This document shows positions 14,944 to 46,502 of a stretch of 64,000 nt of DNA, piece by piece (the stretch's first letter is position 1; each line of letters starts with the position of its first letter). Below the pieces are notes generated by a model, which was not told the DNA's origin, ran no database searches, and saw nothing but the letters and a program-made list of their open reading frames with translations. The stretch spans positions 45,136,001-45,200,000 of the forward strand of contig CM097885.1 in NCBI GenBank assembly GCA_044892525.1, written 5' to 3'. The position numbers and the translations under genes are program-made. This stretch comes from Schmidtea polychroa (taxonomy: Eukaryota).

Positions 14944-15012
<69 letters not shown>
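14944..15012. repeat. (AAT)n microsatellite
   Basis: Directly visible; similar tracts at about 15860-15960, 33605-33635, 43290-43335 and 46470-46500. Confidence 0.95.
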
Positions 15013-15250
15013 GTAATAATAGTTGAAAAATTAAAATATATCTCAAAAATTAATAAATTCATTAAACAATGTAAAATTAAATTTTTTCTGCATTTACTTT
15101 TGATTTAAAATCATTTAATTAAAGAAATGTCATCAGGTGATATTTTAATTAATATTTCACGGTTAACTCAAGCCTCTTAAAGAAAATTGTTAAAATTTAC
15201 CTTTTGAAAAATATATCTTTCAAGTGTTAATTATATTACATTTATAGAAT

Positions 15251-15864: not shown

Positions 15865-15939
<75 letters not shown>

Positions 15940-16218
15940 TAATTATAATAATAATAAAAATTATAATTATAATTATAATTAATAATAATAATTATAATAA
16001 GTATTATTATCGTTAATTTTCAGCCTCTTATCAAAACTGTCTGTCATTCCGATTTCCTCTCAAATATATTGTTACATATTGTTCCAATCCAGTGTTATGC
16101 GAGCATAAAATTATATTCGAAGAAAATAAACATAACTTATAAAACTTTAGAACATAGAAACATTGCATCCTAATTATTACAGTGAAAATAACTTATTACT
16201 AAATCACATACAATTTAA

Positions 16219-22529: not shown

Positions 22530-24360
22530 TGTTGATGTCTCTAAACAAAAATTATATTAAATGAAAATAAAATGGAAATTGAATGTAACAAATAGAAAGA
22601 AAATTGTGATCAATCACATAAATGATGGCTGTTGTTGGTTTCCTATGTATATACGTGTTATTATTATTTTTATTATGTTATTATTAAGTGTTATTGTTGA
22701 TATGTATTAGGAGTTTGTAGAACCCGGTAGAGTCTCCAGTAAAAAGTGTGCCAGGACAACCGGGGTGTTTGTATGTAGCTTGATAGAAAAAATACAACAA
22801 CAATAAATAGTAATCACAGACTTTATCAACTAGAAGAAAAACACACTTTTCCAGGTTCGATCAACGAGTCACAGTTATAGAACTATATCTTTTGATTGAA
22901 TATACAATTAGTCTATGACTGCTTTCTGAGAAGGAGATGAGCTTTTCCTAAATGTCTTCCTAGTATTCCATAATAATAAGGGTACTTCGTTTTGTGGGAA
23001 AAGAGATATGAATTACGATCTCAATTAGTTATTCTTAAACCGGAGATGCTTTCAGTTGTCTACACAGACTTCAGTATGAAACTAGGTAATCTGAGATCGG
23101 TTAAGTTGTCATTAGATATGATTCGTTACCAGGATTAGGTTAGGGGAAAATATGTGGATCGTTTATAAGCTGGGAAAGTATTCGGACTAATGTCATAGTT
23201 AATCTTCAACAGTGCCTTTAAATCCAAACAGTATTAGGAAATGGAAGGATAGGTGAATTGCTTCTGATTCTATAGGATATTTTAATTAAACTCTTGATTA
23301 GATCTTGGGAGGCTTTTCAGATTACAGCTGTTAGATTTTGTAGTTTAATTTTATTTGTTTATTGATCTTTCGATTCTTTTATTTCTGTCATGACAATACT
23401 CTAGTTTCACTTAACTATTATAAGCATTATAATAATGATAATAATCACAAATACGTAAAAAGAACAAATCTAACATGCAGTAATGATAATAATAAAATCA
23501 ACAATAATAACAAAAATAACAGTATATTACAATGGCAAAGTAAATTATGATGGAAACAGAGTTAGGAAAGGGTACAGTTAGATTCGAAATGCAAAATGCG
23601 GAAATTTAAGGAAAAATTAATAGATTTTATTTATCGAAATTGAATTTGGAAAACGGGACAGGTATAGACTAGCTAATGTCGAAAAACATGGTGATTAGGA
23701 ATCGGTCAGAAAATGTATAGGAAGAGTCAAAAAGTATGGAAATGCGTAAAAATAGAAAATCGTAAATTAATTAATTAATTGGCTAATGGAAAATCCGAGC
23801 TTAGCAAATACGAAGGGGTAACAGAAAAGCGCAATCAATCACCATTGGCTCTCAGACGATATTCAAGAAAATCGCTTGTCAACGCGTTGCCAGACAGAGA
23901 AAATTTGGCCGAAGCCTAATTAATCAAAATGAGTATTCTGGTACATAAGGAAACTAAGAATTAAAAACAATCGGCCTTTCGCCTCAGCTAAAAAGAAGAA
24001 AACGAGATTAGGTTAAAAGTAGCATAGTTAGAAGGAATAAGATAAAAAGGATTAGTGAAGCGATCAAATAAATGACTACAGCAGAGATCTCTAAAGAGCT
24101 GAATAAAGAGAAAACGAAATTGTTAACGAAAAAGAGTTCAATCCAGAGGAAGCTTATATATAAGGTGATTATTTTTATACAACACACGAGGTCAAGACAT
24201 CACACGGCGAATAGGACGTTATATCATTGTTGTGGATTTAAAAAGATTGTAGTAATTTGAAACAAAATATATACATTTGAAGTGTTATTTGTTGAAAATT
24301 TATAGAGCAAGAAGAGTAAGAGACACCGACTCGTAGTATTAAGTTTAATAAAACCCAAGA
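22530..24360 (+). mobile_element. Older family-A solo LTR (about 924 bp) interrupted by a family-B solo LTR
   Basis: Starts TGTTGATG and ends AAAACCCAAGA, with 4-bp TSD ATTC (22526-22529, 24361-24364). Clearly homologous to the LTR at 25320, e.g. AAAGGGTACA...TTATCGAAATTGAA...TTAATTAATTGGCTAATGG. Confidence 0.8.
22630..23531. mobile_element. Family-B solo LTR nested in the family-A solo LTR
   Basis: TG...ATTACA ends with 5-bp TSD ATGGC (22625-22629, 23532-23536); conserved hairpin at 22723-22764. Confidence 0.8.
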
Positions 24361-24951: not shown

Positions 24952-25319
24952 ATATAAACATTACAAGCTTTGTGATACCCAGTGCAAATTCCAATAGTAG
25001 ACTAGTTTCGAGCTTTTGGCTCTCATCTGTATTATGCTGGAGAAGTGAAGATTTTTCTTCGCGCCAGGTAAATATACAATATTGCTGATTCAACTCTATT
25101 GCATACATTCCCTGGTACACTGGAAATCATATCACCTGCAAATTAGACGTGATTTCCAGTGTACTAGGGAATGTACTAGGGTTCAGCAATATTGTATTCA
25201 TACCTGGCGCGGAGAGAAATTTTCACGTCTCCTGCATAGTACTAATGAGAGCCAAAAGCTAGAATCTAGTCTACTATTGGGATTTGCACTGGCTATCACA
25301 AAGCTTGTAATGTTTATAT
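24952..25319. repeat. Long imperfect palindrome (foldback/MITE-like)
   Basis: Arm 24952-25088 is the near reverse complement of 25183-25319. The spacer has a further inverted pair (GTACACTGGAAATCA / TGATTTCCAGTGTAC). Confidence 0.85.
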
Positions 25320-26307
25320 TGTTGAGGTTTGAAAATAAATTATTAAATTATATAGTTCAGATTAAAAGGAAAGCCGAAATTGAATGGCGGTCAAGCAGAG
25401 AAGCAATGGCAAAGAAAGATATGATAAAAACAGAACTATAAAAGGGTACAATCAGACATGAAATGGGAAAATGCGCAAACCGGAGGAAGTGGAATAAAGT
25501 GAAAAGTTATCGAAATTGAAGCTGGAAAACGGGAGAGGGGTAGATTAAGGGATGGTGAAGAAGACAGTGAGCAAGAAATTGTTAGAAAATGTGTAGAAAG
25601 GGTCGTAAAACAGACAAATGTGGAAAAACGTAAAATATTAATTAATTAATTGGCTAATGGGAAACCCGAGCTAATGAGAAGCCCGAGCCAATGGAGAACC
25701 CGAGCGATGAAGAAAACCCGAGCACGGCAATTTGGAAGGGTAAACAAACGAGGAATTCAGAGGGCCATTATCCAAACAACCGGATAAACGAGGGTAAACA
25801 AAAGACGGAGAATTACGAAAAGGGTCAACAAAAATAGTCAATTAGGGAATGATAGCGGAAGAAGTCAAAACCAATTAGGTCAAAAACGGGGCAATTACAA
25901 CGATTATGGGAGTATATAAGGAAACTCAAAATTCACATAATCGGCGATAGCCTTAGGTAGGGATACGAAGAAACAGACGATAGGAGTTCGAGGAATAAAA
26001 TAAAAGAAAAAAGGAATTATAAGAGGAATTTAGGAGTCAGAAAGGAATATTAAAAGAGTTCGGATCAGAGAGCGGAATCAAACAAAAGGTGAAACCTATT
26101 TTTTTAAATCGTACAAGGCCGAGACCTTCCAGAGCGGAGTTCGATCTGAAATTGTGTGAGAATTGTGATTAACCAACAGTGTGATTAATTGTTGAGAGTT
26201 CTGAATTGTTATAAAACAAATATACGTTGGGAGTTTGTGTTTATTGATTTTGGAACACGTGGAGTCTGAGTAACCAACGGTTGATTTTGATATCATAAAA
26301 CCCAACA
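25320..26307 (+). repeat. 5' LTR (988 bp)
   Basis: TGTTGAGG...AAAACCCAACA; TATATAAG at 25913-25920 and AATAAA near 25993; direct repeat of 33712-34665. Confidence 0.95.
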
Positions 26308-26314
26308 TATATTT

Positions 26315-26332
26315 TGGTGAGCCCGACGTGAT
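26315..26332 (+). promoter_or_regulatory. Primer binding site, tRNA-Trp type
   Basis: TGGTGAGCCCGACGTGAT differs at one position from the canonical Trp PBS TGGTGACCCCGACGTGAT; 7 nt separate it from the LTR end. Confidence 0.85.
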
Positions 26333-26457
26333 TAAACGTTGGTGGGCGAATATTGAAGGGTGAAAGAGGTGAAGAAAATTAAAGTAATAAGAAAATTGAA
26401 AATAATTGGAAATTGGAAGAGGTAGTAATTATTGATTATTAATTTTAATATTTAGCC

Positions 26458-28845
26458 GTGAGTGAATACAATTTGAGAAACCGAAAAGTAAAGATGGCCA
26501 GAGAGAACGCTGAGATGATAGATTTTGCCAGTTGTCAAAAATTACCGATGAATCAGTATGGAGGAGACCCGGTTGATTTTGCCGATTTCATGGGCGATTA
26601 TTATATGTACGCTTCGGCCTATGGGTGGTCACAAGCCATAATGGTACAAAGATTCCCACTCTATTTAAAAGGAGCCACAAGAGAAGCTTGGCAGCAAGTG
26701 GATAAAAAGACAATTGGAAATGATTGGGCCAAACTCAAGGATGCGATGGCAATGAAATTGGTGGGAGGCGATAAAAAAAGAATAATGCGCCAAAACTTTT
26801 ATGCCAGAGTACAAAATCCAAATGAATCGGTAAGTGAATTTGCATACCGTTTAACGACTTTAGCAGACAAAGCCTTCGAAGCAAAGCCTGAACAAGTGGA
26901 GATGGTAAAACAAGTCAGAGAATTGCTAGAAGATCAATTTATAACTGGAGCCCATCCTGAAATTAAAAAACCACTATGCTACGTGGATTTTTCGAATTTC
27001 GATGAACTCGTGAAAAAAGCAATGAAAATTGAATTGAATTTAAAAAGTACCAGAAAATCTGAAGTATTTGCCGCAAATGCCGAGAAAAGAGAAAGGTCGA
27101 TAACTCCAGTAAAGAATCAATGGGAATCAAAAGAACCAATTCAACCAAACAGCTCTCCAAGATTAGGTAATAAATTGGAAGTTAATAAAGCAACTTTTAG
27201 CAATCAAATAAACGAGATAGCGAAGAATATTGTATGCGAGTTTTGCAAGAAGCCTGGACATTATTCAAATCAATGTTGGTTCAGAAATGGTAGAAATATG
27301 AGTCCCAAAGGAAGACTTACTGAAAATAAGCCAAACAATGGTGACATTGAATGTCATCGATGTGGAAAAATGGGCCACATTAGCAGAAATTGTTTTTCAA
27401 GGACTATATCACCTTCTAGATATCCCAAGAAATCAAGTAAATTTCAAGATGAATCAATCAATGCCAATGTAGTTTATGCTCAAAAAGACGACTTTCAAGA
27501 AAAGATAGAAAATGAAGTTCGAGAAATGAGGAAAAAATTAGACAAGTTGATGTCGAAAATTGAATTTGATGATGAAGCAGACTCTTATATGGCGTACGAA
27601 AATATTTCGGAAAACTTTGCTAATAAAGTAAAAAATGACTTGTTGAACGAAAAGGCTACGTTGTTATTAAATAAAATGGAAAGATGGCTCGAAAATATGG
27701 AAACAAACAATCCAAGATTGAAAGAATGGGTTACAGAGTTAAGTCAGATCCAACTTAGTCATAAGAAATTGAAAAGTGCATTGAACTTATGTTCTAAGCT
27801 TTACAGCATACTCCAAGATGAGGAAATTGCTAAATTAATGAGAACATTTGGAAAAGCATTAAGATCCAAAAACGATTTGGATAATATTATCGTGGAGACC
27901 ACAGACATCAATGGTATTAAAGCTCAATTTTCTATCAATCCTTATGGACAAATCAAAGATTTGACAATGCTTATTCTGGCTAAATACAATAAAGGCAGCG
28001 TGAAATTGACACAACGGCAAATGGGACAACTGAGGGATGAGGAATACTTGGTAGATTGTGGTTTAATCCCTGGATTAAAAAATGAGGTAAATATTTTGGA
28101 TACTTTTAATCATTCAAATTCAGATTTTAAAAAATGGAACGAAATTTTAGGGAATTTGCGAGACATGTTATATATTGGAGATGAGGACGAGATCAATAAA
28201 TGTCTTGAATTAGTGATGAGTTCAAAAATGAATGGAAAAGATAAGGAGAAGCTGTTCGAATGTATTATGCCGCATATTCATAAAGAAACGAAATATCAAA
28301 CCAGATTAAAGGAAACTCTACGGAAATTAAAATATGATTACAGAGAACCGGAGTGTAATTCGAAATCATTAATGATAGCTCTAAATATTGATGGAAAAGT
28401 TGAATACTTTCAAGAGCACTGGAGCGTTAAGGTGTCAAAATTACGACAAAAAGCTGCAGAAACAATGGAAAATAATGAGATTATTGTACTGACTTACAAA
28501 GGAATAGTGTTGGACGATGACGAAAATTTAGTTAATTGCGGGTTTAATCCAAATGACATAAATAATGTTTATGCAACGAAGCCAAAGGATGACATGTCTG
28601 AAAACGAGGTCATTGTAACTCACTGGCCTAGAATCGTAAAAGAGGAAGATGATGAGATTGGAGCAATTAAAACTGAATTATCTGAGGAGCTAAATGAAGC
28701 TGAGTTGAAAGGTTTTGAGTCAAAAAACAAAATTTTACATGAAGTGCGAAATGGAAATGTAACTGATGTCAATGAAACTGATGCAGCAAGTCAAGAAATT
28801 TATAATATGAATGGCAAGCCGATAAAAACGGAAGAATTAAAATGA
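26458..28845 (+). CDS. gag: Gag polyprotein with capsid-like region, two CCHC zinc knuckles and two ubiquitin-like domains
   Basis: Retrotransposon-gag motifs (FPLYLKGATREAW; FYARVQNPNESVSEFAYRL; EDQFITG). Knuckles CEFCKKPGHYSNQC (27235-27276) and CHRCGKMGHISRNC (27352-27393). Ubl-like segments at 27883-28098 and 28363-28575. First ATG at 26494. Confidence 0.92.
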   Translation: MSEYNLRNRKVKMARENAEMIDFASCQKLPMNQYGGDPVDFADFMGDYYMYASAYGWSQAIMVQRFPLYLKGATREAWQQVDKKTIGNDWAKLKDAMAMKLVGGDKKRIMRQNFYARVQNPNESVSEFAYRLTTLADKAFEAKPEQVEMVKQVRELLEDQFITGAHPEIKKPLCYVDFSNFDELVKKAMKIELNLKSTRKSEVFAANAEKRERSITPVKNQWESKEPIQPNSSPRLGNKLEVNKATFSNQINEIAKNIVCEFCKKPGHYSNQCWFRNGRNMSPKGRLTENKPNNGDIECHRCGKMGHISRNCFSRTISPSRYPKKSSKFQDESINANVVYAQKDDFQEKIENEVREMRKKLDKLMSKIEFDDEADSYMAYENISENFANKVKNDLLNEKATLLLNKMERWLENMETNNPRLKEWVTELSQIQLSHKKLKSALNLCSKLYSILQDEEIAKLMRTFGKALRSKNDLDNIIVETTDINGIKAQFSINPYGQIKDLTMLILAKYNKGSVKLTQRQMGQLRDEEYLVDCGLIPGLKNEVNILDTFNHSNSDFKKWNEILGNLRDMLYIGDEDEINKCLELVMSSKMNGKDKEKLFECIMPHIHKETKYQTRLKETLRKLKYDYREPECNSKSLMIALNIDGKVEYFQEHWSVKVSKLRQKAAETMENNEIIVLTYKGIVLDDDENLVNCGFNPNDINNVYATKPKDDMSENEVIVTHWPRIVKEEDDEIGAIKTELSEELNEAELKGFESKNKILHEVRNGNVTDVNETDAASQEIYNMNGKPIKTEELK

Positions 28846-28848
28846 GAA

Positions 28849-30444
28849 TTGAAGTTTATTGAAATTGGTAATACTGATAAATCAAATAACCGTAAGCGGA
28901 AAAAGTGTGAGTTAACAGAAAAAGACGATTTAAGCGATGTAAAAATAGATTTAAATGATTTTATTAAAACAAAAGTGATTTTAAAAAGGTTGGTAATGGA
29001 AATATATGCACTAAATGAAGAGAATGTATATGAAAATGAATTTATGCAACAACTTGCGAAACAGCTGAAAAGGAGATTTCCAATCATACTTCAATATAGC
29101 GTTAAAGGAAATGTATTTTGTGATGAAACAGTAATCAAGAAGTTAATTAACAAGGGTTTGAACAGAGACGTAGTATTGACGGTTCTAGCTTGTATGGTCT
29201 TGAAAATTGGCACACATGGTTGTTTGGACTCGGAAAAAATGGAAAAGTGGATCGAAAAAGCCACCAAAGTGGCAAATACATATGTGACAAACTGGATAAA
29301 ATATAATGGTGGATGGAAAAATTTGGTACTAAAACCGAGGAATTCAAAAAGGGTGTATGAGTTAAAAAAGGCAAAAATGATATATACATGGTTGACGATG
29401 TTTGTTTTTGTAATTTTAGGAATCATCAACAATACAACGTTATTGGTAGTACATGATTATTCTCAAATTAAAAAGAAAATTCCCAGAAATGTAAAAATTT
29501 ATAAAGAATATAAAATTGTGAGTACTGATCTGAAAGAAAAGCAGAGGAAAAATTTCAAAGGTTGGGTAAAGAAATATCAGGATATTTTTATAAAACAAAA
29601 TGAAGCAAAAAGGGACACGAAACTTCAATTTACCAAAAATAAAACTTTAAACAGTTATAGTAATAAAGTGTTAATTACAACAAAACAAATAGAGAGTAAT
29701 AACTTACGAGAGCCATTCACACCGAATTATGACAAAAATACTTACGTGGCACGAGAGCTAAAGGCAAATTTCAAGCCCCCGTGGAGGAATAAACAAAACG
29801 AGACATACACTCCTGAAAAATTCAACAATCAAATTAGAGTTAAAGTAAAAACAAATGAATTATATAACATTGAGAAAGTTATAGAAAATAAATGGTCATT
29901 GTTTAAAGTTGACAGCCAGTTAAACCATTGGAAAAACGAGTCAAATCGAGTAGTTTTTACAGTTCAAAATAAATCAGCGATAGCATATCAAAATTCGGAA
30001 ATCGACAAAAGAAGCATTATCTGTAGTGGACAAAAAATTATCGTTTTGTTGGATGCCGGTAAAAGCTATTTTTCATTTATTACTCCTAATTTAGAATATA
30101 ATTACCTGATAAAAATTAAATACCAACAACGGATATTCGAGCCATATCGATGGCAAACAACTTTATTGGAGACAAAAATGGTGCCAAAGCTGAAATCCGA
30201 CATAACCATTACACGTCCAACTTCTACAAGTCAATATCAATTTAACAATCGTCTAATAAATAAACGGACTCAAATTGAGATTGGTCAAACTTTAATCATC
30301 TGTGAATATTCGATATACCTCATACTGACAGCATTCCTCATACTATCGCTTAGGTTAAGAGTAATAACAATCATTTTGTGTGGAAATAGACAGCATACTA
30401 TAAATGACTTACGACTCGAATCTTTCAATGTGATCAAAATGTGA
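28849..30444 (+). CDS. ORF2, in frame with gag: Bcl-2-like domain, TM anchor and degenerate pol-like remnants
   Basis: BH2 motif TNWIKYNGGWKNLV (29287-29328) with a degenerate BH1-like INKGLNRDVVLTVLACMV and a hydrophobic segment IYTWLTMFVFVILGII. Later KKYQDIF resembles the pre-RT linker, and IIVLLDAG (DAG at 30052-30060) resembles a retropepsin active site. Confidence 0.8.
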   Translation: MKFIEIGNTDKSNNRKRKKCELTEKDDLSDVKIDLNDFIKTKVILKRLVMEIYALNEENVYENEFMQQLAKQLKRRFPIILQYSVKGNVFCDETVIKKLINKGLNRDVVLTVLACMVLKIGTHGCLDSEKMEKWIEKATKVANTYVTNWIKYNGGWKNLVLKPRNSKRVYELKKAKMIYTWLTMFVFVILGIINNTTLLVVHDYSQIKKKIPRNVKIYKEYKIVSTDLKEKQRKNFKGWVKKYQDIFIKQNEAKRDTKLQFTKNKTLNSYSNKVLITTKQIESNNLREPFTPNYDKNTYVARELKANFKPPWRNKQNETYTPEKFNNQIRVKVKTNELYNIEKVIENKWSLFKVDSQLNHWKNESNRVVFTVQNKSAIAYQNSEIDKRSIICSGQKIIVLLDAGKSYFSFITPNLEYNYLIKIKYQQRIFEPYRWQTTLLETKMVPKLKSDITITRPTSTSQYQFNNRLINKRTQIEIGQTLIICEYSIYLILTAFLILSLRLRVITIILCGNRQHTINDLRLESFNVIKM

Positions 30445-31615
30445 TAAAAACTATATTATAAAATTACATGCGTGTAAACAAATTTTAAAAATTAGCATGG
30501 TTATATGAATGTAGATTTGTTACTGTGTTTGGTCGAACTTCGCTATGGTATGCTTGGCCTTGCGCGATAAAGAGTGTTTAAGAAAACTTTAATTATATTT
30601 AACTTCAGGAAGCCCAAGAGGAAGAGTCAATCAAAGAGTGTCGAAACTCAATGAAAGAAATGAGAAGATAAATGAAACCAATGGAGAGGAAAATTGACGA
30701 CTTGGAACTAGAAGATACGATTTGTAAAAGAAAGCTGGAAAGGATGGAAATTCTCTTGTTCCAATTCGAAGCTGAAATCGTATTGTTGAAAATGCAGATG
30801 CAGGGACAGGAATGACCTACTAATAAGGAGGGAGAGATGAACGCGGTACATTAAAATAATTTAATAATTGCTATTAATAAATATTTACAATGAAAACCTC
30901 ACTTTCGTCCTCGAAGTACCAAAAATAATGAGAAAGACTAAACAAAAAAAAAATAAATAAATTAACTAATAAAATTTAATAATAATAGCATAAAGAAATG
31001 ATAGCAAATAAATAAAATAAAAATTTGTAACCTAAGACTTAAAATTGAATAATCAAAATGAGTTCATTAAAATTTGATAAAATGTGCATTTAAAATTGGA
31101 TAAAACCGACACAAAATCTGTCGCTGTACCATAGCAAACACGCTCTATAATTAATAATGCATAATTGATAGCTTCCAATCATTAAGATACACTCAACATT
31201 TAGATAGGAAGCTTGTTATATTGGAAAATCGAATTCCTATTACAAGGAAGATGAAAGAGAAATATTTAATAATGAAATGGAAAATTATTTTTTAATATTT
31301 TTTTTTGAATGGTTATTAGAATGTAATTTTTCACATAAATAATTTTAAAGGTTTAATAATTTTCTATTAACTGTCTTAAAATTGCTCATTTGAAATCCAA
31401 ACGATATTGGGCATGAATACATATTGCGGTAACGACACAAGCTACTCCAAGAAAAAGCATAATAATAAAATAATAAAATGTAAAATAATAATTTGTAGTT
31501 ACATTTAACAAAAAAAAAATTTTTTTCCATTACAGCAAGTCACAAACTTGATACAGAACTTCTGTTTCCATTCTTCAGCTGTTTTCCGCTGTAATCGACC
31601 ATAACTATCTTCAAG

Positions 31616-31947
31616 TCAACGAGCTCTTGAAACTTGTAGTTCAAGTTCTTTTTCATTGAAAATGGATATCAAATTTTTGGGTATGATTTCGTAAAACCCT
31701 TCGAGAAAACTATGAAGTTGTTGGTGAATAGCTCCAATCATTTTCTCTTGACAAACTAATTTAACAGATTCAGATTTATTTTCCTCTGTGAGAAGCACTA
31801 GAGAGTTTCTGTCGGTCCAAATTCTGATATTTGAATAGAAAACGTTTGATAGAGAGACATTGTCAAAACATCCTTTTCTATAGGAATTCCGAACCAGGGA
31901 AAAACTGATAGTATTCTTTTTCTAGATCAGTACATCAAATATATTTG
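31616..31947 (-). pseudogene. HUWE1: Captured HECT-domain exon fragment of a HUWE1-type E3 ubiquitin ligase, antisense to the LTR element
   Basis: Reads [15 protein letters not shown]..., (frameshift) [21 protein letters not shown]..., [52 protein letters not shown]. This is colinear with the HUWE1 HECT as recalled. An acceptor-like TTACAG lies at 31953-31948. Confidence 0.85.
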
Positions 31948-33601
31948 CTGTAATTTTTAATGAGTTATCAAAAAGTTCTATTATTTAACAATAATTCATT
32001 TTTCATGAAATTTCAAGCCTGAAAAGCATATCAAAATTATTAAAAATAATTTTTAAATAAAATTTATATAGAATATTATTAAATTAAATAAAAAAATGAT
32101 AAAATAAAATGGTCTTACAAAATAGGCAATAAAACTAAATTAAATCTAGTCAAGTAGTGTGTAAAAATCCAATACACACTACATAGTTCTTATTGTAGAA
32201 ATGCCGAGTGTGTGTTTGTAGAATGCACGAACCATCATCCGGAATTAGAGTGCGCTTGGAACGATCTGTAGAGAAATATTGTTGATTGCCTAACATGTTC
32301 AATAAAATTTTGTATCCTCTACTGTGACATTAATTCCAATTCTTTTATTTTTTCAAATATCAGTGATGACAATAAAGATCTTATTAAACGAAAATTCAAA
32401 AATAAAAATGCCATTATTTTTACTTTAGATATCGACTTAAATGTTGATGGTTCATACATTTTCCACTTCAATAATACCAATCAATTAATTCAAAAGCTTT
32501 TAGAATTTTTATCTCAACAACATCGAACTTTTTCATTACAGGCACTTATTGATAAATTGGAATTCCCATCGACAAATAATTTGGGTCGATTATTCTCTAT
32601 TAATTGGAAATGATTTTTGACAGCTATTTCTGATTAATTTATATAAAATCAAAATTTTTACATAATCATATTTTTGATATCTAATAATAATTCATTATTT
32701 TGTTATTAATTTTCTGATTTGCTATTAATTGATTGATGATTTGTTATTAATTGCTGATTTGTTATTAATTGATTTGCTGTTTCTTATCATAACTTAGGTT
32801 CTGAACAGTTAATTGTCTGAGAGATTAGTACTTTCTTGAATTGAATTGAATTTTTTGAGTTGGATTGGTTGTGATGTTATCAAGTGCATGGCTTCTACGA
32901 ACACACCCAACTGAAAATAAATAAATAAAATTCAATTAGCAAATCATCCTTACCGTAGTTGATTAAAATAACAAATAATGTCGAAGTTTTGTTGTGATGG
33001 AATAAATAAAATTCAATTAGCAAATTACAAACTAAATGATTACCAGACAAATCCGAATGAGATTTTGGGTAGTAGTACAGTTTATATATGATATTTCTCT
33101 GCCAGCAGTAATTACACAGCACTTCAGCACCAGCCGATCAGAATTGATAAGACACGCCTATATCGTAGATTGTTTGGTATATTTGTGTATTTGGGTTGAT
33201 GTGAGTTTGGAATCACTGTTTGTGCAACCACTACACAAATCAATGTTTATCATATTGGTTCCGGTGGACGGTTGGAGTGGGTCGTTTGAAAATTAGCTCC
33301 TATCTCGGAACAAACAAACTGTGATAAATTTTAACCTCCTTTAACTCGATTCAAATGTTGATCGATGGAATATTTTAAATTGAACTGCAATGATAAAACT
33401 GATATATGGGTAATCTAAATCATTAAACATTATGCATGTTAAATTAAAGACGAATTTTAATAAAATTAATAATAGTCTAATAAAGTCTAATAAAATTAAT
33501 AATAGTCTCAAAATTTTAAATATCTATCAATTTAAAAAAAAAATAATCTCAAAATTTTAATATTCTAAATATTTTATGACTCTCCAATCAAATGAAATTA
33601 A

Positions 33602-33635
<34 letters not shown>

Positions 33636-33698
33636 TATGTGAATTTTAACTGAAATTACATTCTCGAATAAGCATATTTCGAGGACGAAATTTTTTTT

Positions 33699-33711
33699 AA
33701 GGGGGGAGATA
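33699..33711 (+). promoter_or_regulatory. Polypurine tract
   Basis: AAGGGGGGAGATA immediately before the TG of the 3' LTR. Confidence 0.9.
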
Positions 33712-34665
33712 TGTTGAGGTTTGAAAATAAATTATTAAATTATATAGTTCAGATTAAAAGGAAAGCCGAAATTGAATGGCGGTCAAGCAGAGAAGCAATG
33801 GCAAAGAAAGATATGATAAAAACAGAACTATAAAAGGGTACAATCAGACATGAAATGGGAAAATGCGCAAACCGGAGGAAGTGGAATAAAGTGAAAAGTT
33901 ATCGAAATTGAAGCTGGAAAACGGGAGAGGGGTAGATTAAGGGATGGTGAAGAAGACAGTGAGCAAGAAATTGTTAGAAAATGTGTAGAAAGGGTCGTAA
34001 AACAGACAAATGTGGAAAAACGTAAAATATTAATTAATTAATTGGCTAATGGGAAACCCGAGCTAATGAGAAGCCCGAGCCAATGGAGAACCCGAGCGAT
34101 GAAGAAAACCCGAGCACGGCAATTTGGAAGGGTAAACAAACGAGGAATTCAGAGGGCCATTATCCAAACAACCGGATAAACGAGGGTAAACAAAAGACGG
34201 AGAATTACGAAGAGGGTCAACAAAAATAGTCAATTAGGGAATGATAGCGGAAGAAGTCAAAACCAATTAGGTCAAAAACGGGGCAATTACAACGATTATC
34301 GGCGATAGCCTTAGGTAGGGATACGAAGAAACAGACGATAGGAGTTCGAGGAATAAAATAAAAGAAAAAAGGAATTATAAGAGGAATTTAGGAGTCAGAA
34401 AGGAATATTAAAAGAGTTCGGATCAGAGAGCGGAATCAAACAAAAGGTGAAACCTATTTTTTTAAATCGTACAAGGCCGAGACCTTCCAGAGCGGAGTTC
34501 GATCTGAAATTGTGTGAGAATTGTGATTGACCAACAGTGTGATTAATTGTTGAGAGTTCTGAATTGTTATAAAACAAATATACGTTGGGAGTTTGTGTTT
34601 ATTGATTTTGGAACACGTGGAGTCTGAGTAACCAACGGTTGATTTTGATATCATAAAACCCAACA
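33712..34665 (+). repeat. 3' LTR (954 bp)
   Basis: Matches the 5' LTR except for a 34-bp deletion and two substitutions seen by eye (25820/34212, 26171/34529). Confidence 0.95.
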
Positions 34666-34849
34666 ATATTATTTTAATGTTAGACATCAGTAAAAAAATA
34701 TTTTTCACCATTATAAATTGATATAATTTATGTATTGACTAATATTAGTGAGTTCAATAAAAGTTGTGTAAATTGGTATGACTGATTTTCTAAATTTAAT
34801 TTTATTAGTTATCGGGAATTTCAGTAGTGTTCGACAAAGAATAATTTTG

Positions 34850-36441: not shown

Positions 36442-39188
36442 CAACGTTCCCTCTAATTTTTAAAATTGGTGTGTGTGTGCTAACTGCAATGTGGGCAAGT
36501 ATATTAAATTAAAAAAAAATTGGGCAAAATTTCAAAAAAAAATTTTTTTTTTCATTTTATTTTTGTAATATGTAAATAATAAAAAAATTTTACACGTTGC
36601 ATTATATTACATTCAAGCAAGTATTACTAATTTAATAAAAAGTTATAAATAGAAAACAAAAACAATATACCTATATTATATTCAAAAGGTAAAATAACTA
36701 TTAAAAATAAAAAATTATAAAATCAAAATTTAATGTTTTTCACGTCTGTCCTTATTAACAACCCAATGTTCATAAATACTGTCTAAATTAATATTGCCTC
36801 CTGATGTGATAAACGTTTTTATTCGCATCAAGTTATCTAAATTATTAATCTTTAATCTGTTTCGTGATTTTGATTTTATAGCATTCATCAAGCTAAAACC
36901 ACGTTCACAATCTGCACTGGATGACTGAAATGTAGCACAGATATCTAGAAGCACTGTCAATTCTTTAAATTGTGAATCTGCATTAGCCAGCTTAACTAAA
37001 TCAAAAAAATTAGCTACGGAATTACTTTTCATCTTTTCAATTATTAAAAACTTAAAATCGTTATATTGTTTTGAAATTGATGTTCCAATTTGTTCGTCAT
37101 ATCCGGGAATTATATTTTTATATTTTTTAACCAGCTTTTCTATACAATCTTGACCAAAGTTAAAATCTTTTGAATTTATTATAGCATTATGATCAAATGC
37201 ATGCCAATCCATTACGTCTTCTTCTGGAAACCTATTCTTTAAATGTATACATAGCAATTCGATAAATCGTAAAATTGCTGAAGTGTCGATACCAGGATTT
37301 TTACCAATTAGATCTTTTATATCATTATTCCAATGAACTATTTCGCCTAAATATTGGTTTTCGATTTTGTTGATCCTTGCTTTAGCAAATTGCATTGCAT
37401 CCATTATTGTCAACAAACTCCTCTGAAATATTTTACAAAGAGATGACAACTCTTCAAGAACGTCATTTAAAACCATTAATGAAAGGCGATATTTTGGATC
37501 GTTAAGAAGTTTTAAGCAATATTTGCATATTGGATCATTACATTTCTCCACTTCCTCAGTGCAGTATTCTATCAATAGATCGTACTTACGAATAAATGCT
37601 CTTACTGCAAAATGTCTTGACAGCCATCTAACTTCCTTTAATGGACGAAATGCTAATACATCACATTCAGTTACGCTTGCCAATTCTTCAAAGCTTGCTT
37701 TCTTTACGGTTGATCTACTAAACATGGTAAATACTGTCTTTAATAATGTTTCAATATCACACATTATTGGTACTTTTTCCAAGCATCATCAATTCCTAAA
37801 TCTTCCTTGTGTGCTACACAATGCTGCTGCGATAAATGAGGGATTCTGTTCCGTAACAATGCAGCCACACCATTATTCTTACCAAGCATTACAGAAGCAC
37901 CGTCTGATGTAAACATTACCATATTATGCATATTGATATTATTTTTTATATAAAATTCATAAATAGCTTCAAATATGAAGGAACTAGTACATCCAGTCAA
38001 TTTTAAAATTCCTGCAAATACGGTTTTATGGTCAGAAGAAGTTTTTGGCCGGTATTTTATGTATAAAATTAAAGTTTTGTGTGTAGATATATCAGTACTT
38101 TCATCAACAATTAAACAATGAAATAACGATTCTCTTAGTTCCTCAAGAAACTGTTTTTGTATTACAAAAAGTAATGCATTGAACAAATTCGAATGCATAA
38201 TTCTTGCTGCGCCAACTTTTGGGAATAGATATATATTTTTCCATATACTCATGAATTTCCTGTACTGATGACATCGAAGTGTTAATTTTTATTGCAAGAA
38301 TAACGTTGTCTATCAAAATTTTGGTATCGTTTTTATTAGATTTTTTACGTTCTATCAAATCTGCACGTATCTGTCGTTCTTCTGTAGAGGAAGTTAACAT
38401 TTCAACAATTCCACCTTTTTTGCAATTACGTAATTTTATTACCGAATCTAAATGTACTTTTTGGCTTAAATGCCTCTTTGAGTAGTACAACTTCCAATTC
38501 GCCCAGTTTTTGCCATTTTTAAACTCACTTTCAGTTTTTGCTTCGGTACATATTTTGCAAAGTACATCATTGGTTTCAATTTGATAATTAAAAATATCAC
38601 CTAATTTAATTTTTTCTTTTATAGTTGACGATGAGACGCATGTTTCAACAATTTCATTTAACCATTCTTTTTTGAATTTTGAAGATGTCTTGATTGTGGA
38701 TTTTAAGCTTTCATCGAATTTTCGTTTTGACATACTAAATGTATAAAAAATAAAGGGATTGCATTTTAAAATAATTTTTGAAATAAATATCACAGCCTTC
38801 TCAACATTAAAATAAATAATCAAAATCATAGTGCAAAATTTAATTTACTGTAGATTACTTACTTATTTATTATTTTTCTATCATGTCGTGGTGTTATCTG
38901 TTAGTTAATTTTAAATTTCACATCCACATTTATTGAATTCAAAAAAGTGAACATTGACATTTAATTTCAATGTTGCCAATTGAGACATACTAAAACAAAT
39001 AACCCAGAATTTAGTGTGGAAATCTATACGAAATTTTCAACTGGGTGCGTTTACGCAATGAAAATGGTGACAAATAAAAAAAATTATTGTTTGCAATAAT
39101 TTCTAGTGGGCGGATAGAAATGCTGAGTGGGCAAATGTCAATTTTTAACTGGGCGGCCGCCCGTTTGCCCAGCTTAGAGGGAACGTTG
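36442..39188 (-). mobile_element. Full-length hAT transposon (2747 bp) with a twice-frameshifted transposase (ZNF862-like)
   Basis: TIRs CAACGTTCCCTCTAA / TTAGAGGGAACGTTG with 8-bp TSD GTAATTAC (36434-36441, 39189-39196). Overlapping ORFs 38143-38829, 37764-38252 (VDESTD, SDGASVM, HCVAHK) and 36730-37782 (RWLSR, SSADCERGFSLMN). Confidence 0.95.
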
Positions 39189-39936
39189 GTAATTACATTT
39201 AATATCTTTTATAATCCCATTAATAATAATGATAGTAATACCACGTAATAAAATTCTGACTAATAATTAGTATAACAATGGCCATTAAGATAATAACCAT
39301 AGAGATAAAATTAAAAAAAATAATGTTAATAATAATAGTGATGCTTATAATAATGGGGAATAATAATGATAATGATAAACAACCTTATTAGTATTCATAA
39401 TAATAATAAAAATCCTGGTGCTAATAATGGTAACAATAATAGGGATAATAATAACCGTCACCATAATTAAATGTTAATATAAGCCCTTTGCTGTGAAAAT
39501 CCAACACTTTTTGTCATCATTATTACAAGATGTTACCCGTCAAAAATAATGTAGCAATTTTTTAGTTTCGATATATTTAATCTATATTTAATTGTATTCA
39601 AAACATATAATTGAAAAACTTTTTAATGACAATAATTTTAGTAAATGTTTTCGAGTTATTAAGTAATTGGCCCTGATATAATATAGTTTTTTAATATTTA
39701 TCTACTTATAATTATAGAGTAGTATAAAAATTATTTATCGGACAGACNNNNNNNNNNNNNNNNNNNNNNNNNNNNNNNNNNNNNNNNNNNNNNNNNNNNN
39801 NNNNNNNNNNNNNNNNNNNNNNNNNNNNNNNNNNNNNNNNNNNNNNNNNNNNNNNNNNNNNNNNNNNNNNNNNNNNNNNNNNNNNNNNNNNNNNNNNNNN
39901 NNNNNTAAGCCTTTTGCTGCAAATAATGTATTTAAT

Positions 39937-40380: not shown

Positions 40381-42951
40381 TCAATGACAACAGATCAAAT
40401 TCATGATTTCATTGATTTCTTCTTTAGTGTTGATCTTTGGCTGTCTGTTTATTATGAGAATTGCTTCTTTGATTCTGACATTTTTCTTTTGGATGTTTCC
40501 ATTAGCTATGATTTCTATTGAAATATTTTTTCTTTCCTCTGTTGGCTGACACTGCCGGAGATGTCTGCCCAACGAGGATGTTCCACCAGGATCTAGATGT
40601 TCTTTAACTCTTTGGTGCAATGTCCTGAGGGTACTTCCAATGTAGATTTCATTGCATACATTGCACGTGATGCAATAGACGATGTTTTTTCTAAAGCACC
40701 TATCTTTCGGTGTCTGGCAGTTTTTCATTGTGCAATTGTTTTCTCTATTTATGTTGCCTGCCAGAGCCCTTCTCAATGTCCAAGATTTATGTGCTATCCG
40801 AATTGGAAGACCGGTACGTTTAAGTTCTTTCAGGATCTTGAAGTCGAGTATGTCACTGATGAATGGGATATTCAGATAGAAATATTTCTGATTCTTTTGT
40901 GTTAATTCCCTAGATCTTCTTGGGGTAGAATTCATTTTTTCAATGTCCTCACCTTGGTATCCGTTTCGGTGTAGGATTTTATTGAAATTTGATTGCTCTT
41001 TAAAGTTTTCGTTTTTCTCCGTGCATCGATTGGCTATTCTTCGTTTCTCGTTTCTTATGACATTTACTTTCTGTAAGTATGGAAGCGCTGATCTTTGGTG
41101 CATAAATATTTCTTTGCGAGCTGGTTTTCTGTAGAACCCGTATGTTGGAGTATTTTCTTCTATTTTGATTCTCAAATCCAATAAATTGAGGGATCCATCT
41201 TCTTCCGGATATTCGATTTCGAACTTAATATCTTGATGAGCCGCATTGAATGAATGAAATATTTCCTCCGCTTCTTTTCTGTTTTTGGTCAAGATGAAGA
41301 TATCATCTACATATCTTGCATAGAAACCGATGGGTTGTATGGTCCTCAGTGTCTGTCGTTCGAGGTTATCCATAAAGATGATTGCTAGCAGTCCTGATAT
41401 GCTAGAACCCATAGGCAGACCTTTAACTTGTTTATAGATATTTTGTTCAAAGGTAAAATAGGTGTTCTCGAGGATAACAGTAAGTAGTTTGGTGATATTC
41501 TCGGTATTCATTTCCTTTATTAACAAGTTGCTTTCTCTTAATTTCTTTTCTAAACATTGAATAGCCTCTGTTGGTTCGATAGATGTGTATAGTGATACGA
41601 CATCAAGACTAAATGGGTATTGGAATTCTCTATGACAAGTCATGTTATTATTTAGTCTTGTCATGAGGCAGTCGCTGCTTTGAAGATGGTGTGGTATCGT
41701 GTCCAATAAAGGTTTCAAGATCTTTGCAAGGAGCCAACTTGTTTTAGTTGTTGGTCCATTTTTGTTGGACACTATAGGTCTAATTTTGATACCAGGACCC
41801 TCTTTGTGAGTTTTAATTAGGTGGTAGAAGTTAGGAAGATCAGAATTTTTTGTGACGAAGCTGTTGGTTATTCTGTTGTTGAGCCTCATTTCCAAAGCTA
41901 TGGCTTTCCATACTTTGTTGATCTTCATTTCGATGGTGTTTGGTGACATGCGGCTGACTTTCTTGTATGTTTCGATGTTGCCGAGGTGTTCGTAACCAGC
42001 TTCACAGTAACGATTCTTCTCTATAATGCAAAATTCTCCCCCCTTGTCACTTGGTAAGTAAACGTACGGTTTCTTTTTAAGGGATTTTAATATTGCCTGT
42101 TCGTCTTTCGTTAGGTTTGAGAGATATGGTTTTCTTCTTTCCTTCTCAACTAACTCCATGATTTTGTGACAGACCTTTGAGAGTGTTGAATCTAATTCTG
42201 CATCAGGATTTGGTTGATAGAGTTTATCTGTGTTTATGTATACTGGGAGCTGGTTTTCGCTATTTTCATTTTCATGCGGTATTGTATTGTTCCATTTGAT
42301 CTGGTACGCAATGCGACAAAGAGCTGTTTTGAAATTGAGGATGGCTGCTTCATCTATTTCTCTGTTTATACTGAACTTTGGTCCTAGTGAAAGTAATCCT
42401 TTTTCACCTTTGGATAGACAATTTGTGAGGTCGGTTACTAGTTCTTTGTTCACTGTAATGCTTTCGTTTCCGTCCAGTGTTTCATTGTTCTTAACAAGGC
42501 CTGCTTTGAGCTCCTTTTTTCTCAAAAGGTGTTTGATTCTTTTGTCAAATCGCAAGGAATAATGTACTTCTGCTGTCATGAAGGATTGTCTTTGTACCTC
42601 GTAGATCAATTCTTTTGGGTGGTTATTCAAATACGTTTTCAAAATGTTTTCTTGATTCTTTTGTTCCCGATGAGTTTCTCCGTACATACTTCTAATTAAA
42701 TTTGTTAAAATATAATCTTTGATGTTTTTATTTCTCTTGATGTTTTGATCTTTGTTGAGAATCTGAGGTAAGTGGATGTTATCAATTGTTGTTGGAAAGA
42801 TCTTTATTTCCTTACATCGGCGAAGGAAATTTATTTGGCAGTATAATTTCGCAATTTTCTCGTTGATTCTAGCTAAATTCCGTATTTCCAAGTATTTTGC
42901 CCGGCTCAGGCCTTTTGAAAGTATAAAATGATGATTGCTTGGTAGCAGCAT
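40381..42951 (-). CDS. Penelope-like reverse transcriptase with GIY-YIG endonuclease, 856 aa, uninterrupted
   Basis: PSDKGG, KIRPIVS, SLDVVSLYTSI, GLPMGSSISGLLA and YARYVDDIF motifs; C-terminal NIVYCITCNVCNEIYIGSTLRTLHQRVKEH. Confidence 0.96.
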   Translation of the reverse strand: MLLPSNHHFILSKGLSRAKYLEIRNLARINEKIAKLYCQINFLRRCKEIKIFPTTIDNIHLPQILNKDQNIKRNKNIKDYILTNLIRSMYGETHREQKNQENILKTYLNNHPKELIYEVQRQSFMTAEVHYSLRFDKRIKHLLRKKELKAGLVKNNETLDGNESITVNKELVTDLTNCLSKGEKGLLSLGPKFSINREIDEAAILNFKTALCRIAYQIKWNNTIPHENENSENQLPVYINTDKLYQPNPDAELDSTLSKVCHKIMELVEKERRKPYLSNLTKDEQAILKSLKKKPYVYLPSDKGGEFCIIEKNRYCEAGYEHLGNIETYKKVSRMSPNTIEMKINKVWKAIALEMRLNNRITNSFVTKNSDLPNFYHLIKTHKEGPGIKIRPIVSNKNGPTTKTSWLLAKILKPLLDTIPHHLQSSDCLMTRLNNNMTCHREFQYPFSLDVVSLYTSIEPTEAIQCLEKKLRESNLLIKEMNTENITKLLTVILENTYFTFEQNIYKQVKGLPMGSSISGLLAIIFMDNLERQTLRTIQPIGFYARYVDDIFILTKNRKEAEEIFHSFNAAHQDIKFEIEYPEEDGSLNLLDLRIKIEENTPTYGFYRKPARKEIFMHQRSALPYLQKVNVIRNEKRRIANRCTEKNENFKEQSNFNKILHRNGYQGEDIEKMNSTPRRSRELTQKNQKYFYLNIPFISDILDFKILKELKRTGLPIRIAHKSWTLRRALAGNINRENNCTMKNCQTPKDRCFRKNIVYCITCNVCNEIYIGSTLRTLHQRVKEHLDPGGTSSLGRHLRQCQPTEERKNISIEIIANGNIQKKNVRIKEAILIINRQPKINTKEEINEIMNLICCH

Positions 42952-43248: not shown

Positions 43249-43287
43249 ATTAAATACATTATTTGCAGCAAAAGGCTTAAATTATCA

Positions 43288-43336
<49 letters not shown>

Positions 43337-44099
43337 AAATATTAATATTTAATTTTTTAATTTGTATTTTCTCTTCATATTAAATTTAAAATATTAATTT
43401 TGTTACCCTCCTTAATATTTAATGTGCTTATGTCTAGAAATCAGTCCACTATACGTGATAAAATGGAGCAATTTAAGTCGAAATTGTAGTGAAGACTCAA
43501 AATTTATTTTATTTTATTTTGTTATTTGTTATTTATTACATTTATAAGTTTAGTCTCATTAAACTATTAGTACAAGTTAATTTTTAAATTGTATATATAA
43601 ATTTTAAAAATTTGTTTTGTTTAATCCTTATTATATATTTTTCATGGTTTAATTAATCACATTTTCATTTTTTCAATCCATCCTTTAATATTGGGTTTAT
43701 CGTTTATTAGTGACTTTTCCACTTGTGTCAAATCTAGTCCACCTCCCATTTCCTCCTTTTATTAATTAAAATATTAAAAAATTATAATAGCAAAAACCCT
43801 GAACCAAAAAATGCCTTTCTATGGTCAGTTTCATATTAACATATTAACAAAGCACGTCAGTTTCTATGATGTTCATATCCGATTCCGAATGATCGTTAAC
43901 AGTGTTCGTTGTGAATCCCAATTTAAACAAATTCATGTTAACTAATTCTTTTTCTTTTCAACCTTTCGCTTACGTTTGAGCGCTCCACTTAGATAAACAC
44001 ATTTGTCTGACATTTTGTATTTCCGATTGATTGTTAAATATTTTTAAATATTAATCTGATTTATTTATTTAATTAATATTTTCTCTTGCTAATAACCAC

Positions 44100-46470: not shown

Positions 46471-46502
<32 letters not shown>

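What the first reader, a model, noticed from the sequence alone, without database searches (positions are those of the whole stretch)
25320..34665. Young LTR retroelement encoding its own Bcl-2-like apoptosis regulator
Seen: intact LTRs, TSD, PBS and PPT, plus a Gag-linked frame with a clear BH2 signature (WIKYNGGW), a degenerate BH1 and a hydrophobic anchor placed as in Bcl-2 proteins. Known: Bcl-2 mimics are typical of large DNA viruses, not retrotransposons. From memory, giant planarian Burro gypsy elements have been reported to carry an anti-apoptotic domain, so this may be a relative. Inference: a compact TE-borne cell-survival module (Gag + 2 Ubl + Bcl-2-TM + antisense HECT) that could protect the stem or germ cells in which it replicates.
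Basis: partly seen in the sequence, partly recalled or inferred. Interest (0 to 1): 0.9.

Follow-up and report, generated by a model that had tools for sequence, protein, structure and literature searches.

The report
Pol-less planarian-type retroelement with Bcl-2-like domain
A recently inserted 9.3-kb LTR retroelement has no replication enzymes but keeps an open frame for a capsid protein, two ubiquitin-like domains and a very divergent Bcl-2-like cell-death regulator; this arrangement is already reported for the giant Burro retroelements of planarians, so the find is real but not unprecedented.

Summary
Two LTRs (988 and 954 nt) differ by 2 substitutions and one 34-nt indel. They have TG..CA ends, a 4-nt target duplication, a PBS and a PPT. 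One long sense frame (26494-30444) carries Gag, two CCHC knuckles, a coiled coil, two ubiquitin-like domains, a Bcl-2-like helical region and a hydrophobic anchor. One in-frame stop lies between the second Ubl and the Bcl-2-like part.

The Bcl-2 call is supported only below threshold:
- Pfam PF00452 scores 16 bits (E 0.015).
- The best PDB sequence hits are a flatworm Bcl-2 (E 0.2-0.3).
- About 50 top Foldseek hits are all Bcl-2 family, but from low-confidence models.

The fold is therefore not shown.

The element has no PR/RT/RH/IN. Its 3' third is non-coding and holds a single antisense exon-sized fragment of a HUWE1-type HECT domain, not a working ligase. It is best read as a non-autonomous, compact relative of Burro-type elements. 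In Burro, a SUMO-like domain followed by a BCL2-like motif is already published (PMC6431247).

I did not fetch copies from elsewhere, because the bar on fetching may apply, so selection on the domain is untested.

The parts
25320..34665 (+). Whole LTR retroelement, 9346 nt, with no N runs inside
   Evidence: LTR pair and flanks
25316..25319 (.). Left copy of the 4-nt target-site duplication
   Evidence: The same 4 nt sit at both flanks. This is weak on its own in DNA that is 72% A+T.
25320..26307 (+). 5' LTR, 988 nt, TG..CA ends. It contains a 17-nt unit repeated about 3 times (25653-25705).
26315..26330 (+). Primer-binding-site-like stretch starting TGG, 7 nt after the LTR
   Evidence: Read directly. 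The tRNA partner is not identified; there are no tRNA genes in the window.
26494..30444 (+). Single long sense frame, given as one part. It reads Gag, two CCHC knuckles, coiled coil, Ubl, Ubl, Bcl-2-like region, hydrophobic anchor, then a tail of unknown kind. One in-frame stop interrupts it; no frameshift was seen.
   Evidence: The first ATG is at 26494, where the relative P0001 starts to align.
26653..26889 (+). Gag capsid-like domain (PF03732)
   Evidence: E 9.7e-9, 35.8 bits, above the cutoff of 24.1
27235..27393 (+). Two CCHC zinc knuckles (27235-27276 and 27352-27393)
   Evidence: PF00098 E 9.3e-8; CX2CX4HX4C pattern found twice
27910..28071 (+). First ubiquitin-like domain
   Evidence: It aligns with residues 547-599 of relative P0001, which score PF00240 at E 2.7e-8, above the cutoff. 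The window's own copy gives no Pfam hit on its own.
28429..28569 (+). Second ubiquitin-like (SUMO-like) domain
   Evidence: Own weak PF00240 hit, E 0.0026. It aligns with residues 727-775 of P0001, which score PF11976 Rad60-SLD above the cutoff.
28945..29343 (+). Bcl-2-like helical region, predicted as about 7 helices, with the BH1-BH2 part at 29122-29316
   Evidence: PF00452 E 0.015, 16.2 bits, below the cutoff of 31.4. PDB best hits 3qbr and 7jmt, E 0.2-0.3. Foldseek top lists are all Bcl-2 family but not significant. Helix pattern.
29377..29451 (+). Hydrophobic anchor-like segment about 20 residues after the BH2-like motif
   Evidence: Kyte-Doolittle 19-residue mean up to 2.1
29452..30444 (+). 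Open tail of about 330 codons with no recognisable family. A second hydrophobic segment lies near its end (about 30286-30387).
   Evidence: No Pfam or PDB match; hydrophobicity
30445..33698 (.). Non-coding 3' third with host-like composition and no pol remnant
   Evidence: 64-104 stops per ~1089 codons in every frame, and purine share falling from about 0.6 to about 0.5. No family hit in any open piece of 35 codons or more except the HECT piece.
31628..31822 (-). Antisense exon-sized fragment of a HUWE1-type HECT domain (N-lobe only)
   Evidence: PF00632 E 2.8e-11, profile positions 132-187 of 306. HUWE1 chains score E 3.7e-19, matching residues about 4192-4252 of 4374.
33699..33711 (+). Polypurine tract abutting the 3' LTR
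   Evidence: Read directly
33712..34665 (+). 3' LTR, 954 nt
34666..34669 (.). Right copy of the 4-nt target-site duplication

Best explanation
This is a recently integrated, non-autonomous LTR retroelement of the planarian Burro type in compact form. Shown: it keeps all cis parts needed for retrotransposition (LTRs, PBS, PPT). It also keeps an almost uninterrupted frame for Gag, two CCHC knuckles, a coiled coil, two ubiquitin-like domains, a very divergent Bcl-2-like region, a hydrophobic anchor and an unassigned tail. It has no protease, reverse transcriptase, RNase H or integrase. Its 3' third is non-coding DNA that includes one antisense exon-sized piece of a HUWE1-type HECT gene. Inferred: pol was replaced by trapped host DNA, and the element was copied in trans by enzymes of an autonomous relative. 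The Bcl-2-like domain was inherited from the Burro-like lineage rather than acquired by this element. The Gag-Ubl-Ubl protein is the main product. The complete Bcl-2-like part has no ATG of its own before its first helix, so it could be made only as a rare read-through fusion. That fusion would be membrane-anchored and might damp mitochondrial apoptosis as cellular Bcl-2 proteins do. The HECT fragment has no protein function.
For: Cis parts and youth. Coding state: 2 stops in 1329 codons against about 130 in the other sense frames. Gag and CCHC. Two relatives, P0001 and P0002 (31-32% identity), share the Gag-CCHC-coiled coil-Ubl layout. P0001 scores PF00240 and PF11976 above cutoff and ends just after the second Ubl, so a stop there looks ancestral. 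Bcl-2 pointers: PF00452 is the only apoptosis-related Pfam hit, E 0.015 over profile positions 34-100. The two best PDB sequence hits are Schistosoma japonicum Bcl-2. All of about 50 listed Foldseek PDB hits for two models are Bcl-2 family chains. The W-x4-GGW motif is unique in the window, and a hydrophobic anchor follows it. No pol. Composition shifts in the 3' third. The HECT piece is isolated, with none in the flanks. Literature: Burro polyproteins carry Gag with 2-3 CCHC knuckles, a Ubi2/SUMO-like PF11976 domain, then BCL2-like, then env-like, PR and RT; DNA trapped between LTRs gives non-autonomous derivatives (PMC6431247).
Against: Every Bcl-2 signal is below the usual significance thresholds. 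Both AlphaFold models are poor (pLDDT 38.7 and 51.9) and their TM-scores to Bcl-2 chains are only 0.2-0.48, so the fold is not shown. phmmer of the downstream part against 1.84 billion representatives found nothing, and a domain-only search found nothing. No Burro sequence was compared, so kinship rests on shared domain order. The MATH, BIR and ankyrin domains reported in Burro are absent. No read-through context or downstream RNA structure was found (z = 0.5), so the Bcl-2-like part may not be expressed from this copy. Copy number and trans-mobilisation are not shown.
Confidence: 0.65

Rival explanations
1. The Bcl-2 likeness is chance. The region is just a lysine- and asparagine-rich helical linker in an A+T-rich element, and the W-x4-GGW motif is a coincidence.
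For: PF00452 scores 16.2 bits against a cutoff of 31.4. PDB E-values are 0.2-0.3. There are no hits in two large protein searches. The 3D models do not superpose well on Bcl-2 chains. BH1 is degenerate.
Against: Three different methods point to the same family and to nothing else. The hit covers both BH1 and BH2 in register. The best sequence hit is a flatworm Bcl-2. The helix count and the anchor position fit. The published Burro architecture places a BCL2-like motif exactly after the SUMO-like domain.
Confidence: 0.12
2. This is not one mobile unit. It is a 3'-truncated element plus a separate solo LTR (or an assembly join) that happen to bracket host DNA, including a HUWE1-like exon.
For: Composition changes near 30.5-31.3 kb. 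The 3' third has no element-like coding. A 4-nt duplication of A/T bases is weak evidence.
Against: The LTRs are 99.8% identical. A polypurine tract abuts the 3' LTR. The matching 4-nt flanks have a chance of about 0.008. There are no N runs inside. No further HECT exons lie in the flanks, so this is not a resident HUWE1 gene.
Confidence: 0.08
3. One reading: this copy is an actively selected, self-contained cell-survival module (Gag, two Ubl, Bcl-2-TM and antisense HECT) that protects the stem or germ cells in which it replicates.
For: The long frame is nearly intact. The apoptosis and ubiquitin theme recurs in Burro. HUWE1 is known, from my own knowledge, as a ligase of a Bcl-2 family member.
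Against: The HECT piece is about 60 residues with no catalytic part. There is no pol, so the element does not replicate by itself. The Bcl-2-like part lies behind an in-frame stop with no ATG and no read-through signal. A young copy stays open without any selection. BURRO1 is described as intestinally enriched.
Confidence: 0.1

Closest known systems
Burro / GYPSM1 giant Ty3-gypsy-like retroelements of Schmidtea mediterranea and other Dugesiidae (Grohme et al. 2018 and Jurka 2007, as summarised in PMC6431247)
   Same: N-terminal Retrotrans_gag with 2-3 CCHC knuckles, a coiled-coil ('Smc'-like) stretch, and a SUMO-like PF11976 domain followed by a BCL2-like motif, all in one sense frame. The host genome is very A+T-rich.
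   Different: It is 9.3 kb rather than over 30 kb. No MATH, BIR or ankyrin domains were detected, and no env-like region. There is no PR-dUTPase-RT-RH-IN. A stop follows the second Ubl, whereas Burro has one giant polyprotein. Direct sequence similarity was not tested.
Large retrotransposon derivatives (LARD-type non-autonomous LTR elements; Kalendar et al. 2004, cited in PMC6431247)
   Same: LTRs, PBS and PPT are kept, pol is replaced by non-coding or host DNA, and copying depends on an autonomous partner.
   Different: It retains a long open gag-type frame with accessory domains. Copy number and a partner element are not established.
Cellular Bcl-2 family proteins, nearest the Schistosoma japonicum Bcl-2 (PDB 3qbr, 7jmt)
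   Same: BH1-BH2 region in register, the W-x4-GGW motif, about 7-8 predicted helices, and a hydrophobic segment about 20 residues after BH2.
   Different: It scores far below the family threshold and BH1 is degenerate. It is embedded in a retroelement frame with about 330 further codons after the anchor, and it has no start codon of its own.
Bcl-2 homologues of large DNA viruses (herpes-, pox-, irido-, asfarviruses)
   Same: A mobile genetic parasite carrying a Bcl-2-like domain.
   Different: The viral structure library gave no significant match. Viral Bcl-2 entries were scattered among noise, so nothing suggests a viral rather than a cellular origin.
Host-gene transduction by retroviruses and LTR elements
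   Same: A piece of a host gene (HUWE1-type HECT exon) lies between the LTRs in place of element genes.
   Different: The piece is antisense, about 195 nt, non-functional as protein, and apparently flanked by non-coding DNA.

Membership tests
LTR retrotransposon (structural definition) | Direct LTRs with TG..CA ends and a short target-site duplication | tested here: met
   LTRs of 988 and 954 nt, 2 mismatches plus 1 indel, and a 4-nt duplication
LTR retrotransposon (structural definition) | PBS next to the 5' LTR and PPT next to the 3' LTR | tested here: met
   Read directly. The tRNA partner is not identified.
Autonomous Ty3/gypsy (Metaviridae-like) element | pol with PR-RT-RH-IN in that order | tested here: not met
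   No such Pfam domain in the long frame or in any open piece of 35 codons or more across 30445-33711, on either strand
Autonomous Ty3/gypsy (Metaviridae-like) element | Gag with capsid-like domain and CCHC knuckle(s) | tested here: met
   PF03732 E 9.7e-9 and PF00098 E 9.3e-8
Burro-type planarian retroelements | SUMO-like/Ubl domain followed by a BCL2-like motif downstream of Gag-CCHC in the same frame | tested here: met
   The order is Gag, CCHC, Ubl, Ubl (PF11976 via P0001), Bcl-2-like, matching the description in PMC6431247. The Bcl-2 part is sub-threshold.
Burro-type planarian retroelements | Giant size (over 30 kb) and a single polyprotein of about 4900 aa with MATH, BIR and ankyrin domains and an env-like region | tested here: not met
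   The element is 9.3 kb and none of these domains was found
Burro-type planarian retroelements | Sequence similarity of Gag or LTR to named Burro elements | not tested
   The length-limited protein searches could not reach proteins of about 4900 aa.
Bcl-2 family (PF00452) | Score above the Pfam gathering threshold | tested here: not met
   16.2 bits against 31.4
Bcl-2 family (PF00452) | BH1 and BH2 motifs in register | tested here: inconclusive
   The profile match spans positions 34-100 and the BH2-like W-x4-GGW motif is present. BH1 is degenerate.
Bcl-2 family (PF00452) | Globular bundle of about 8 helices around a central hairpin | tested here: inconclusive
   7-8 helices are predicted, but pLDDT is 38.7 and 51.9 and TM-scores are 0.2-0.48. 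The top hits are nonetheless all Bcl-2 family.
Bcl-2 family (PF00452) | C-terminal tail anchor | tested here: inconclusive
   The hydrophobic segment is at the right distance, but the frame runs on for about 330 codons, so it is not terminal.
HECT E3 ubiquitin ligase | Complete HECT domain with C-lobe and catalytic cysteine | tested here: not met
   Only profile positions 132-187 of 306 are present. No other piece lies in the element or its flanks.
Non-autonomous LTR derivative (LARD-like) | Cis parts kept and pol absent | tested here: met
Non-autonomous LTR derivative (LARD-like) | Several dispersed copies sharing the same internal structure | not tested
   There is no second copy in the window. 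Copies elsewhere were not fetched.

The most novel reading that the evidence does not exclude
A pol-less retroelement keeps only the host-manipulating half of a Burro-like genome (Gag, Ubl, Bcl-2-like). In addition, its sense transcript carries about 195 nt antisense to an exon of HUWE1, which I recall as a ligase acting on a Bcl-2 family member. If that stretch feeds the small-RNA pathways, the element would interfere with cell-death control in two ways: a read-through Bcl-2-like fusion protein, and antisense targeting of a host apoptosis-linked ligase. Its keeping the module without pol would mean the module serves the element family in trans.
Probability: 0.06. Interest if true: 0.75.

Novelty: new member of a known kind. 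Interest (0 to 1): 0.4.

Why it matters
Transposon-borne apoptosis regulators are rare. In animals they are so far described only for the Burro elements, where their function is untested. A short, nearly intact copy isolates the Gag-Ubl-Bcl-2-like part from a 30-kb polyprotein. That gives a tractable sequence for structural and expression description of the domain. It also shows that this lineage spawns non-autonomous derivatives that carry host gene fragments. It does not change the picture that Bcl-2-like domains in planarian retroelements are already known.

Tried and rejected
1. Close or distant protein relatives of the Bcl-2-like part. A domain-only word-index search and a full phmmer of the downstream part against 1.84 billion representatives both gave nothing. 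No alignment could therefore be built to improve the structure prediction.
2. Foldseek against the viral library gave only noise.
3. Profile search with the Gag-Ubl alignment A2, run to see whether longer relatives carry PF00452 or pol domains. It returned only the same two proteins.
4. By eye I thought a D-A-G loop in the tail of the frame looked like a retropepsin active site. Pfam and PDB searches of 29986-30441 gave no support, so I rejected this.
5. An env-like region after the Bcl-2-like part, as in Burro. There were no hits.
6. Continuation of the HECT piece in another frame, or further HECT exons in the element or its flanks. None was found.
7. A read-through-stimulating RNA structure after the in-frame stop. 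None was found (z = 0.5).
8. Rfam and tRNA scans of the window gave nothing.
9. An exact look-up of a host ORF (epoxide hydrolase-like) to name the organism. It is not on record, so the organism is only inferred to be a planarian, from the roughly 28% G+C content and the Burro-like layout.
10. Grohme et al. 2018 is not held in the paper library, so its content is cited through PMC6431247.


Full report
**1. The observation**

The window is about 28% G+C throughout. Repeat search and alignment show two direct repeats, at 25320-26307 (988 nt) and 33712-34665 (954 nt).
- A global alignment gives 2 mismatches and one 34-nt indel, a substitution divergence of 0.2%. An earlier count said 3 substitutions; 2 is correct.
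- Both repeats start TGTTGA and end CCAACA.
- The four bases outside each end are identical, with a chance of about 0.008 at this composition.
- A TGG-initiated PBS-like stretch lies 7 nt inside the 5' LTR, and a polypurine tract abuts the 3' LTR.
- There are no N runs inside the element.

**2. Coding content**

The sense frame from 26458 (first ATG at 26494) to 30444 has only two stops in 1329 codons, one internal and one terminal. The other two sense frames have 127 and 138. This is a real and essentially intact coding frame. Pfam finds Retrotrans_gag (E 9.7e-9) and zf-CCHC (E 9.3e-8), plus a weak ubiquitin hit. Two CX2CX4HX4C knuckles are present.

The length-limited protein search found two relatives, P0001 (799 aa) and P0002 (674 aa). 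They are 31-32% identical over 74-87% of the upstream part and align throughout Gag, the knuckles, a coiled-coil stretch and two Ubl-like blocks.
- P0001 scores PF00240 (E 2.7e-8) and PF11976 Rad60-SLD (E 1.4e-5), both above their cutoffs.
- These two stretches map onto 27910-28071 and 28429-28569 of the window.
- P0001 ends shortly after the second Ubl. This suggests that a stop in the linker after the second Ubl is an old feature of this group rather than fresh damage.

**3. The Bcl-2-like part**

The downstream part of the frame begins after the one in-frame stop, which lies in the linker between the second Ubl and the helical region. The evidence for Bcl-2 kinship is as follows.
- **Pfam.** PF00452 Bcl-2 scores E 0.056 for the whole downstream part and E 0.015 (16.2 bits) for the domain alone. 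The match covers profile positions 34-100, that is BH1 to BH2. The gathering score is 31.4.
- **PDB sequences.** The two best hits are both the Schistosoma japonicum Bcl-2 (3qbr, 7jmt), E 0.2-0.3. They align the helix before BH2 and the W-x4-GGW stretch.
- **Motif frequency.** W-x4-GGW occurs once in the six-frame translation of the window and never in 200 shuffles.
- **Structure prediction.** AlphaFold2 without an alignment predicts an all-helical domain of 7-8 helices but at low confidence, pLDDT 38.7 and 51.9.
- **Foldseek against the PDB.** For both models, every one of about 50 listed best hits is a Bcl-2 family chain (Bcl-2, Bcl-xL, Bak, Bok, A1, NRZ). However, E is 0.07-0.9 and TM-scores are 0.2-0.48.
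- **Foldseek against the viral library.** It gives only noise, with a few viral Bcl-2 entries scattered in it.
- **Hydrophobic segment.** One follows about 20 residues after the BH2-like motif.
- **Large protein searches.** Two searches found no relatives, so no alignment could be made to improve the model.

Several methods point to one family and to nothing else, but each is below its usual threshold, and the fold itself is not demonstrated. I put the probability that this is a true, very divergent Bcl-2 homologue at about 0.8-0.85. The published Burro architecture raises that figure.

**4. Expression of that part**

In the standard code the downstream part has no methionine before a position inside its first predicted helix. 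A complete domain could therefore be made only by reading through the in-frame stop, or by a splice that I cannot predict. The 100 nt after the stop fold no better than shuffles (z = 0.5). I recognise no known read-through context (own knowledge). Whether this copy makes the domain at all is open.

**5. What is missing**

After the anchor the frame runs on for about 330 codons with no family or PDB match. From 30445 to the polypurine tract, every frame on both strands has 64-104 stops per ~1089 codons, and the purine excess of the sense strand fades.

I scanned all open pieces of 35 codons or more there, on both strands. Nothing of PR, RT, RNase H, integrase or Env was found. The element is therefore non-autonomous. 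In break counts:
- the gag-type frame has one in-frame stop and no frameshift that I could see;
- the pol genes are absent altogether, replaced by one block of non-coding DNA;
- the LTRs differ by one indel.

**6. The 'antisense HECT'**

One minus-strand piece matches PF00632 (E 2.8e-11) over profile positions 132-187 of 306. It is closest by far to HUWE1: E 3.7e-19, against about 1e-10 for NEDD4-type ligases. It matches residues about 4192-4252 of 4374.
- No other HECT piece lies in the element.
- There is none in another frame next to it.
- There is none in the larger open minus-strand pieces of the flanks that I scanned, ten pieces of 52-108 codons.

It is an isolated exon-sized fragment without the catalytic lobe. 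That makes it trapped host DNA, not a ligase gene and not a resident HUWE1 locus. I searched pieces only by reference and joined nothing.

**7. Comparison with what is known**

The review PMC6431247 reports the following.
- Burro elements of Schmidtea mediterranea (GYPSM1/Burro-1 to -4; Jurka 2007, Grohme et al. 2018) and a relative in Dugesia (Girardia) tigrina encode a giant polyprotein.
- That polyprotein starts with Retrotrans_gag and two or three CCHC knuckles.
- It contains an 'Smc' (coiled-coil) motif, MATH, BIR and ankyrin domains, then a Ubi2/SUMO-like PF11976 domain followed by a BCL2-like motif, an env-like region, and PR-dUTPase-RT-RH-IN.
- DNA trapped between LTRs yields non-autonomous derivatives.

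The element here shows the same unusual order: Gag, CCHC, coiled coil, Ubl/SLD, Bcl-2-like. It lacks the MATH, BIR, ankyrin, env-like and pol parts, and it is 9.3 kb rather than over 30 kb. The very A+T-rich DNA also fits planarians (over 70% A/T; PMC11410931). I therefore file it as a compact, pol-less member of the Burro-like kind. Direct sequence kinship was not tested. A TE-borne Bcl-2-like domain is not new, and its function is still untested in the literature.

**9. Verdict**

The element is a young, non-autonomous Burro-like LTR retroelement with a probable but unproven Bcl-2-like domain and a trapped HUWE1-type exon fragment. I rate interest as moderate (0.4) and classify it as a new member of a known kind.

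Noticed in passing
window 40381-42951 (-): An 856-aa ORF with reverse transcriptase (PF00078, E 2e-14) and a GIY-YIG nuclease domain (E 1.2e-5). This is the layout of a Penelope-like retroelement. An N run (39748-39905) lies just beside it and was left as it stands.
   Followed up: partly
window 36730-38829 (-): Three overlapping ORFs carry a hAT dimerisation domain, DUF4371 and a weak zinc-finger hit. This looks like a hAT-type DNA transposase split over several frames.
   Followed up: partly
window 6884-7597 (+): A 237-aa ORF with an epoxide hydrolase N-terminal domain (PF06441, E 2.5e-12), probably part of a host gene. An exact-product look-up found no record.
   Followed up: partly
window 23530-23801 (+) and 54268-54734 (-): Two stretches are 71-75% identical to the 5' portion of the element's LTR. 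They are probably solo-LTR remnants or LTRs of a related family.
   Followed up: no
window 25653-25705 and 34045-34097 (+): A 17-nt unit is repeated about three times inside each LTR, possibly a regulatory repeat. The 34-nt difference between the LTRs removes a TATA-like stretch from the 3' LTR only.
   Followed up: no
window 33602-33635; also about 14945-15021, 15855-16020, 43287-43337, 46471-46520: An (AAT)n microsatellite lies just upstream of the polypurine tract. The same simple repeat recurs elsewhere in the window.
   Followed up: no
window 51139-51394 and 56072-56236: Two further N runs.
   Followed up: no
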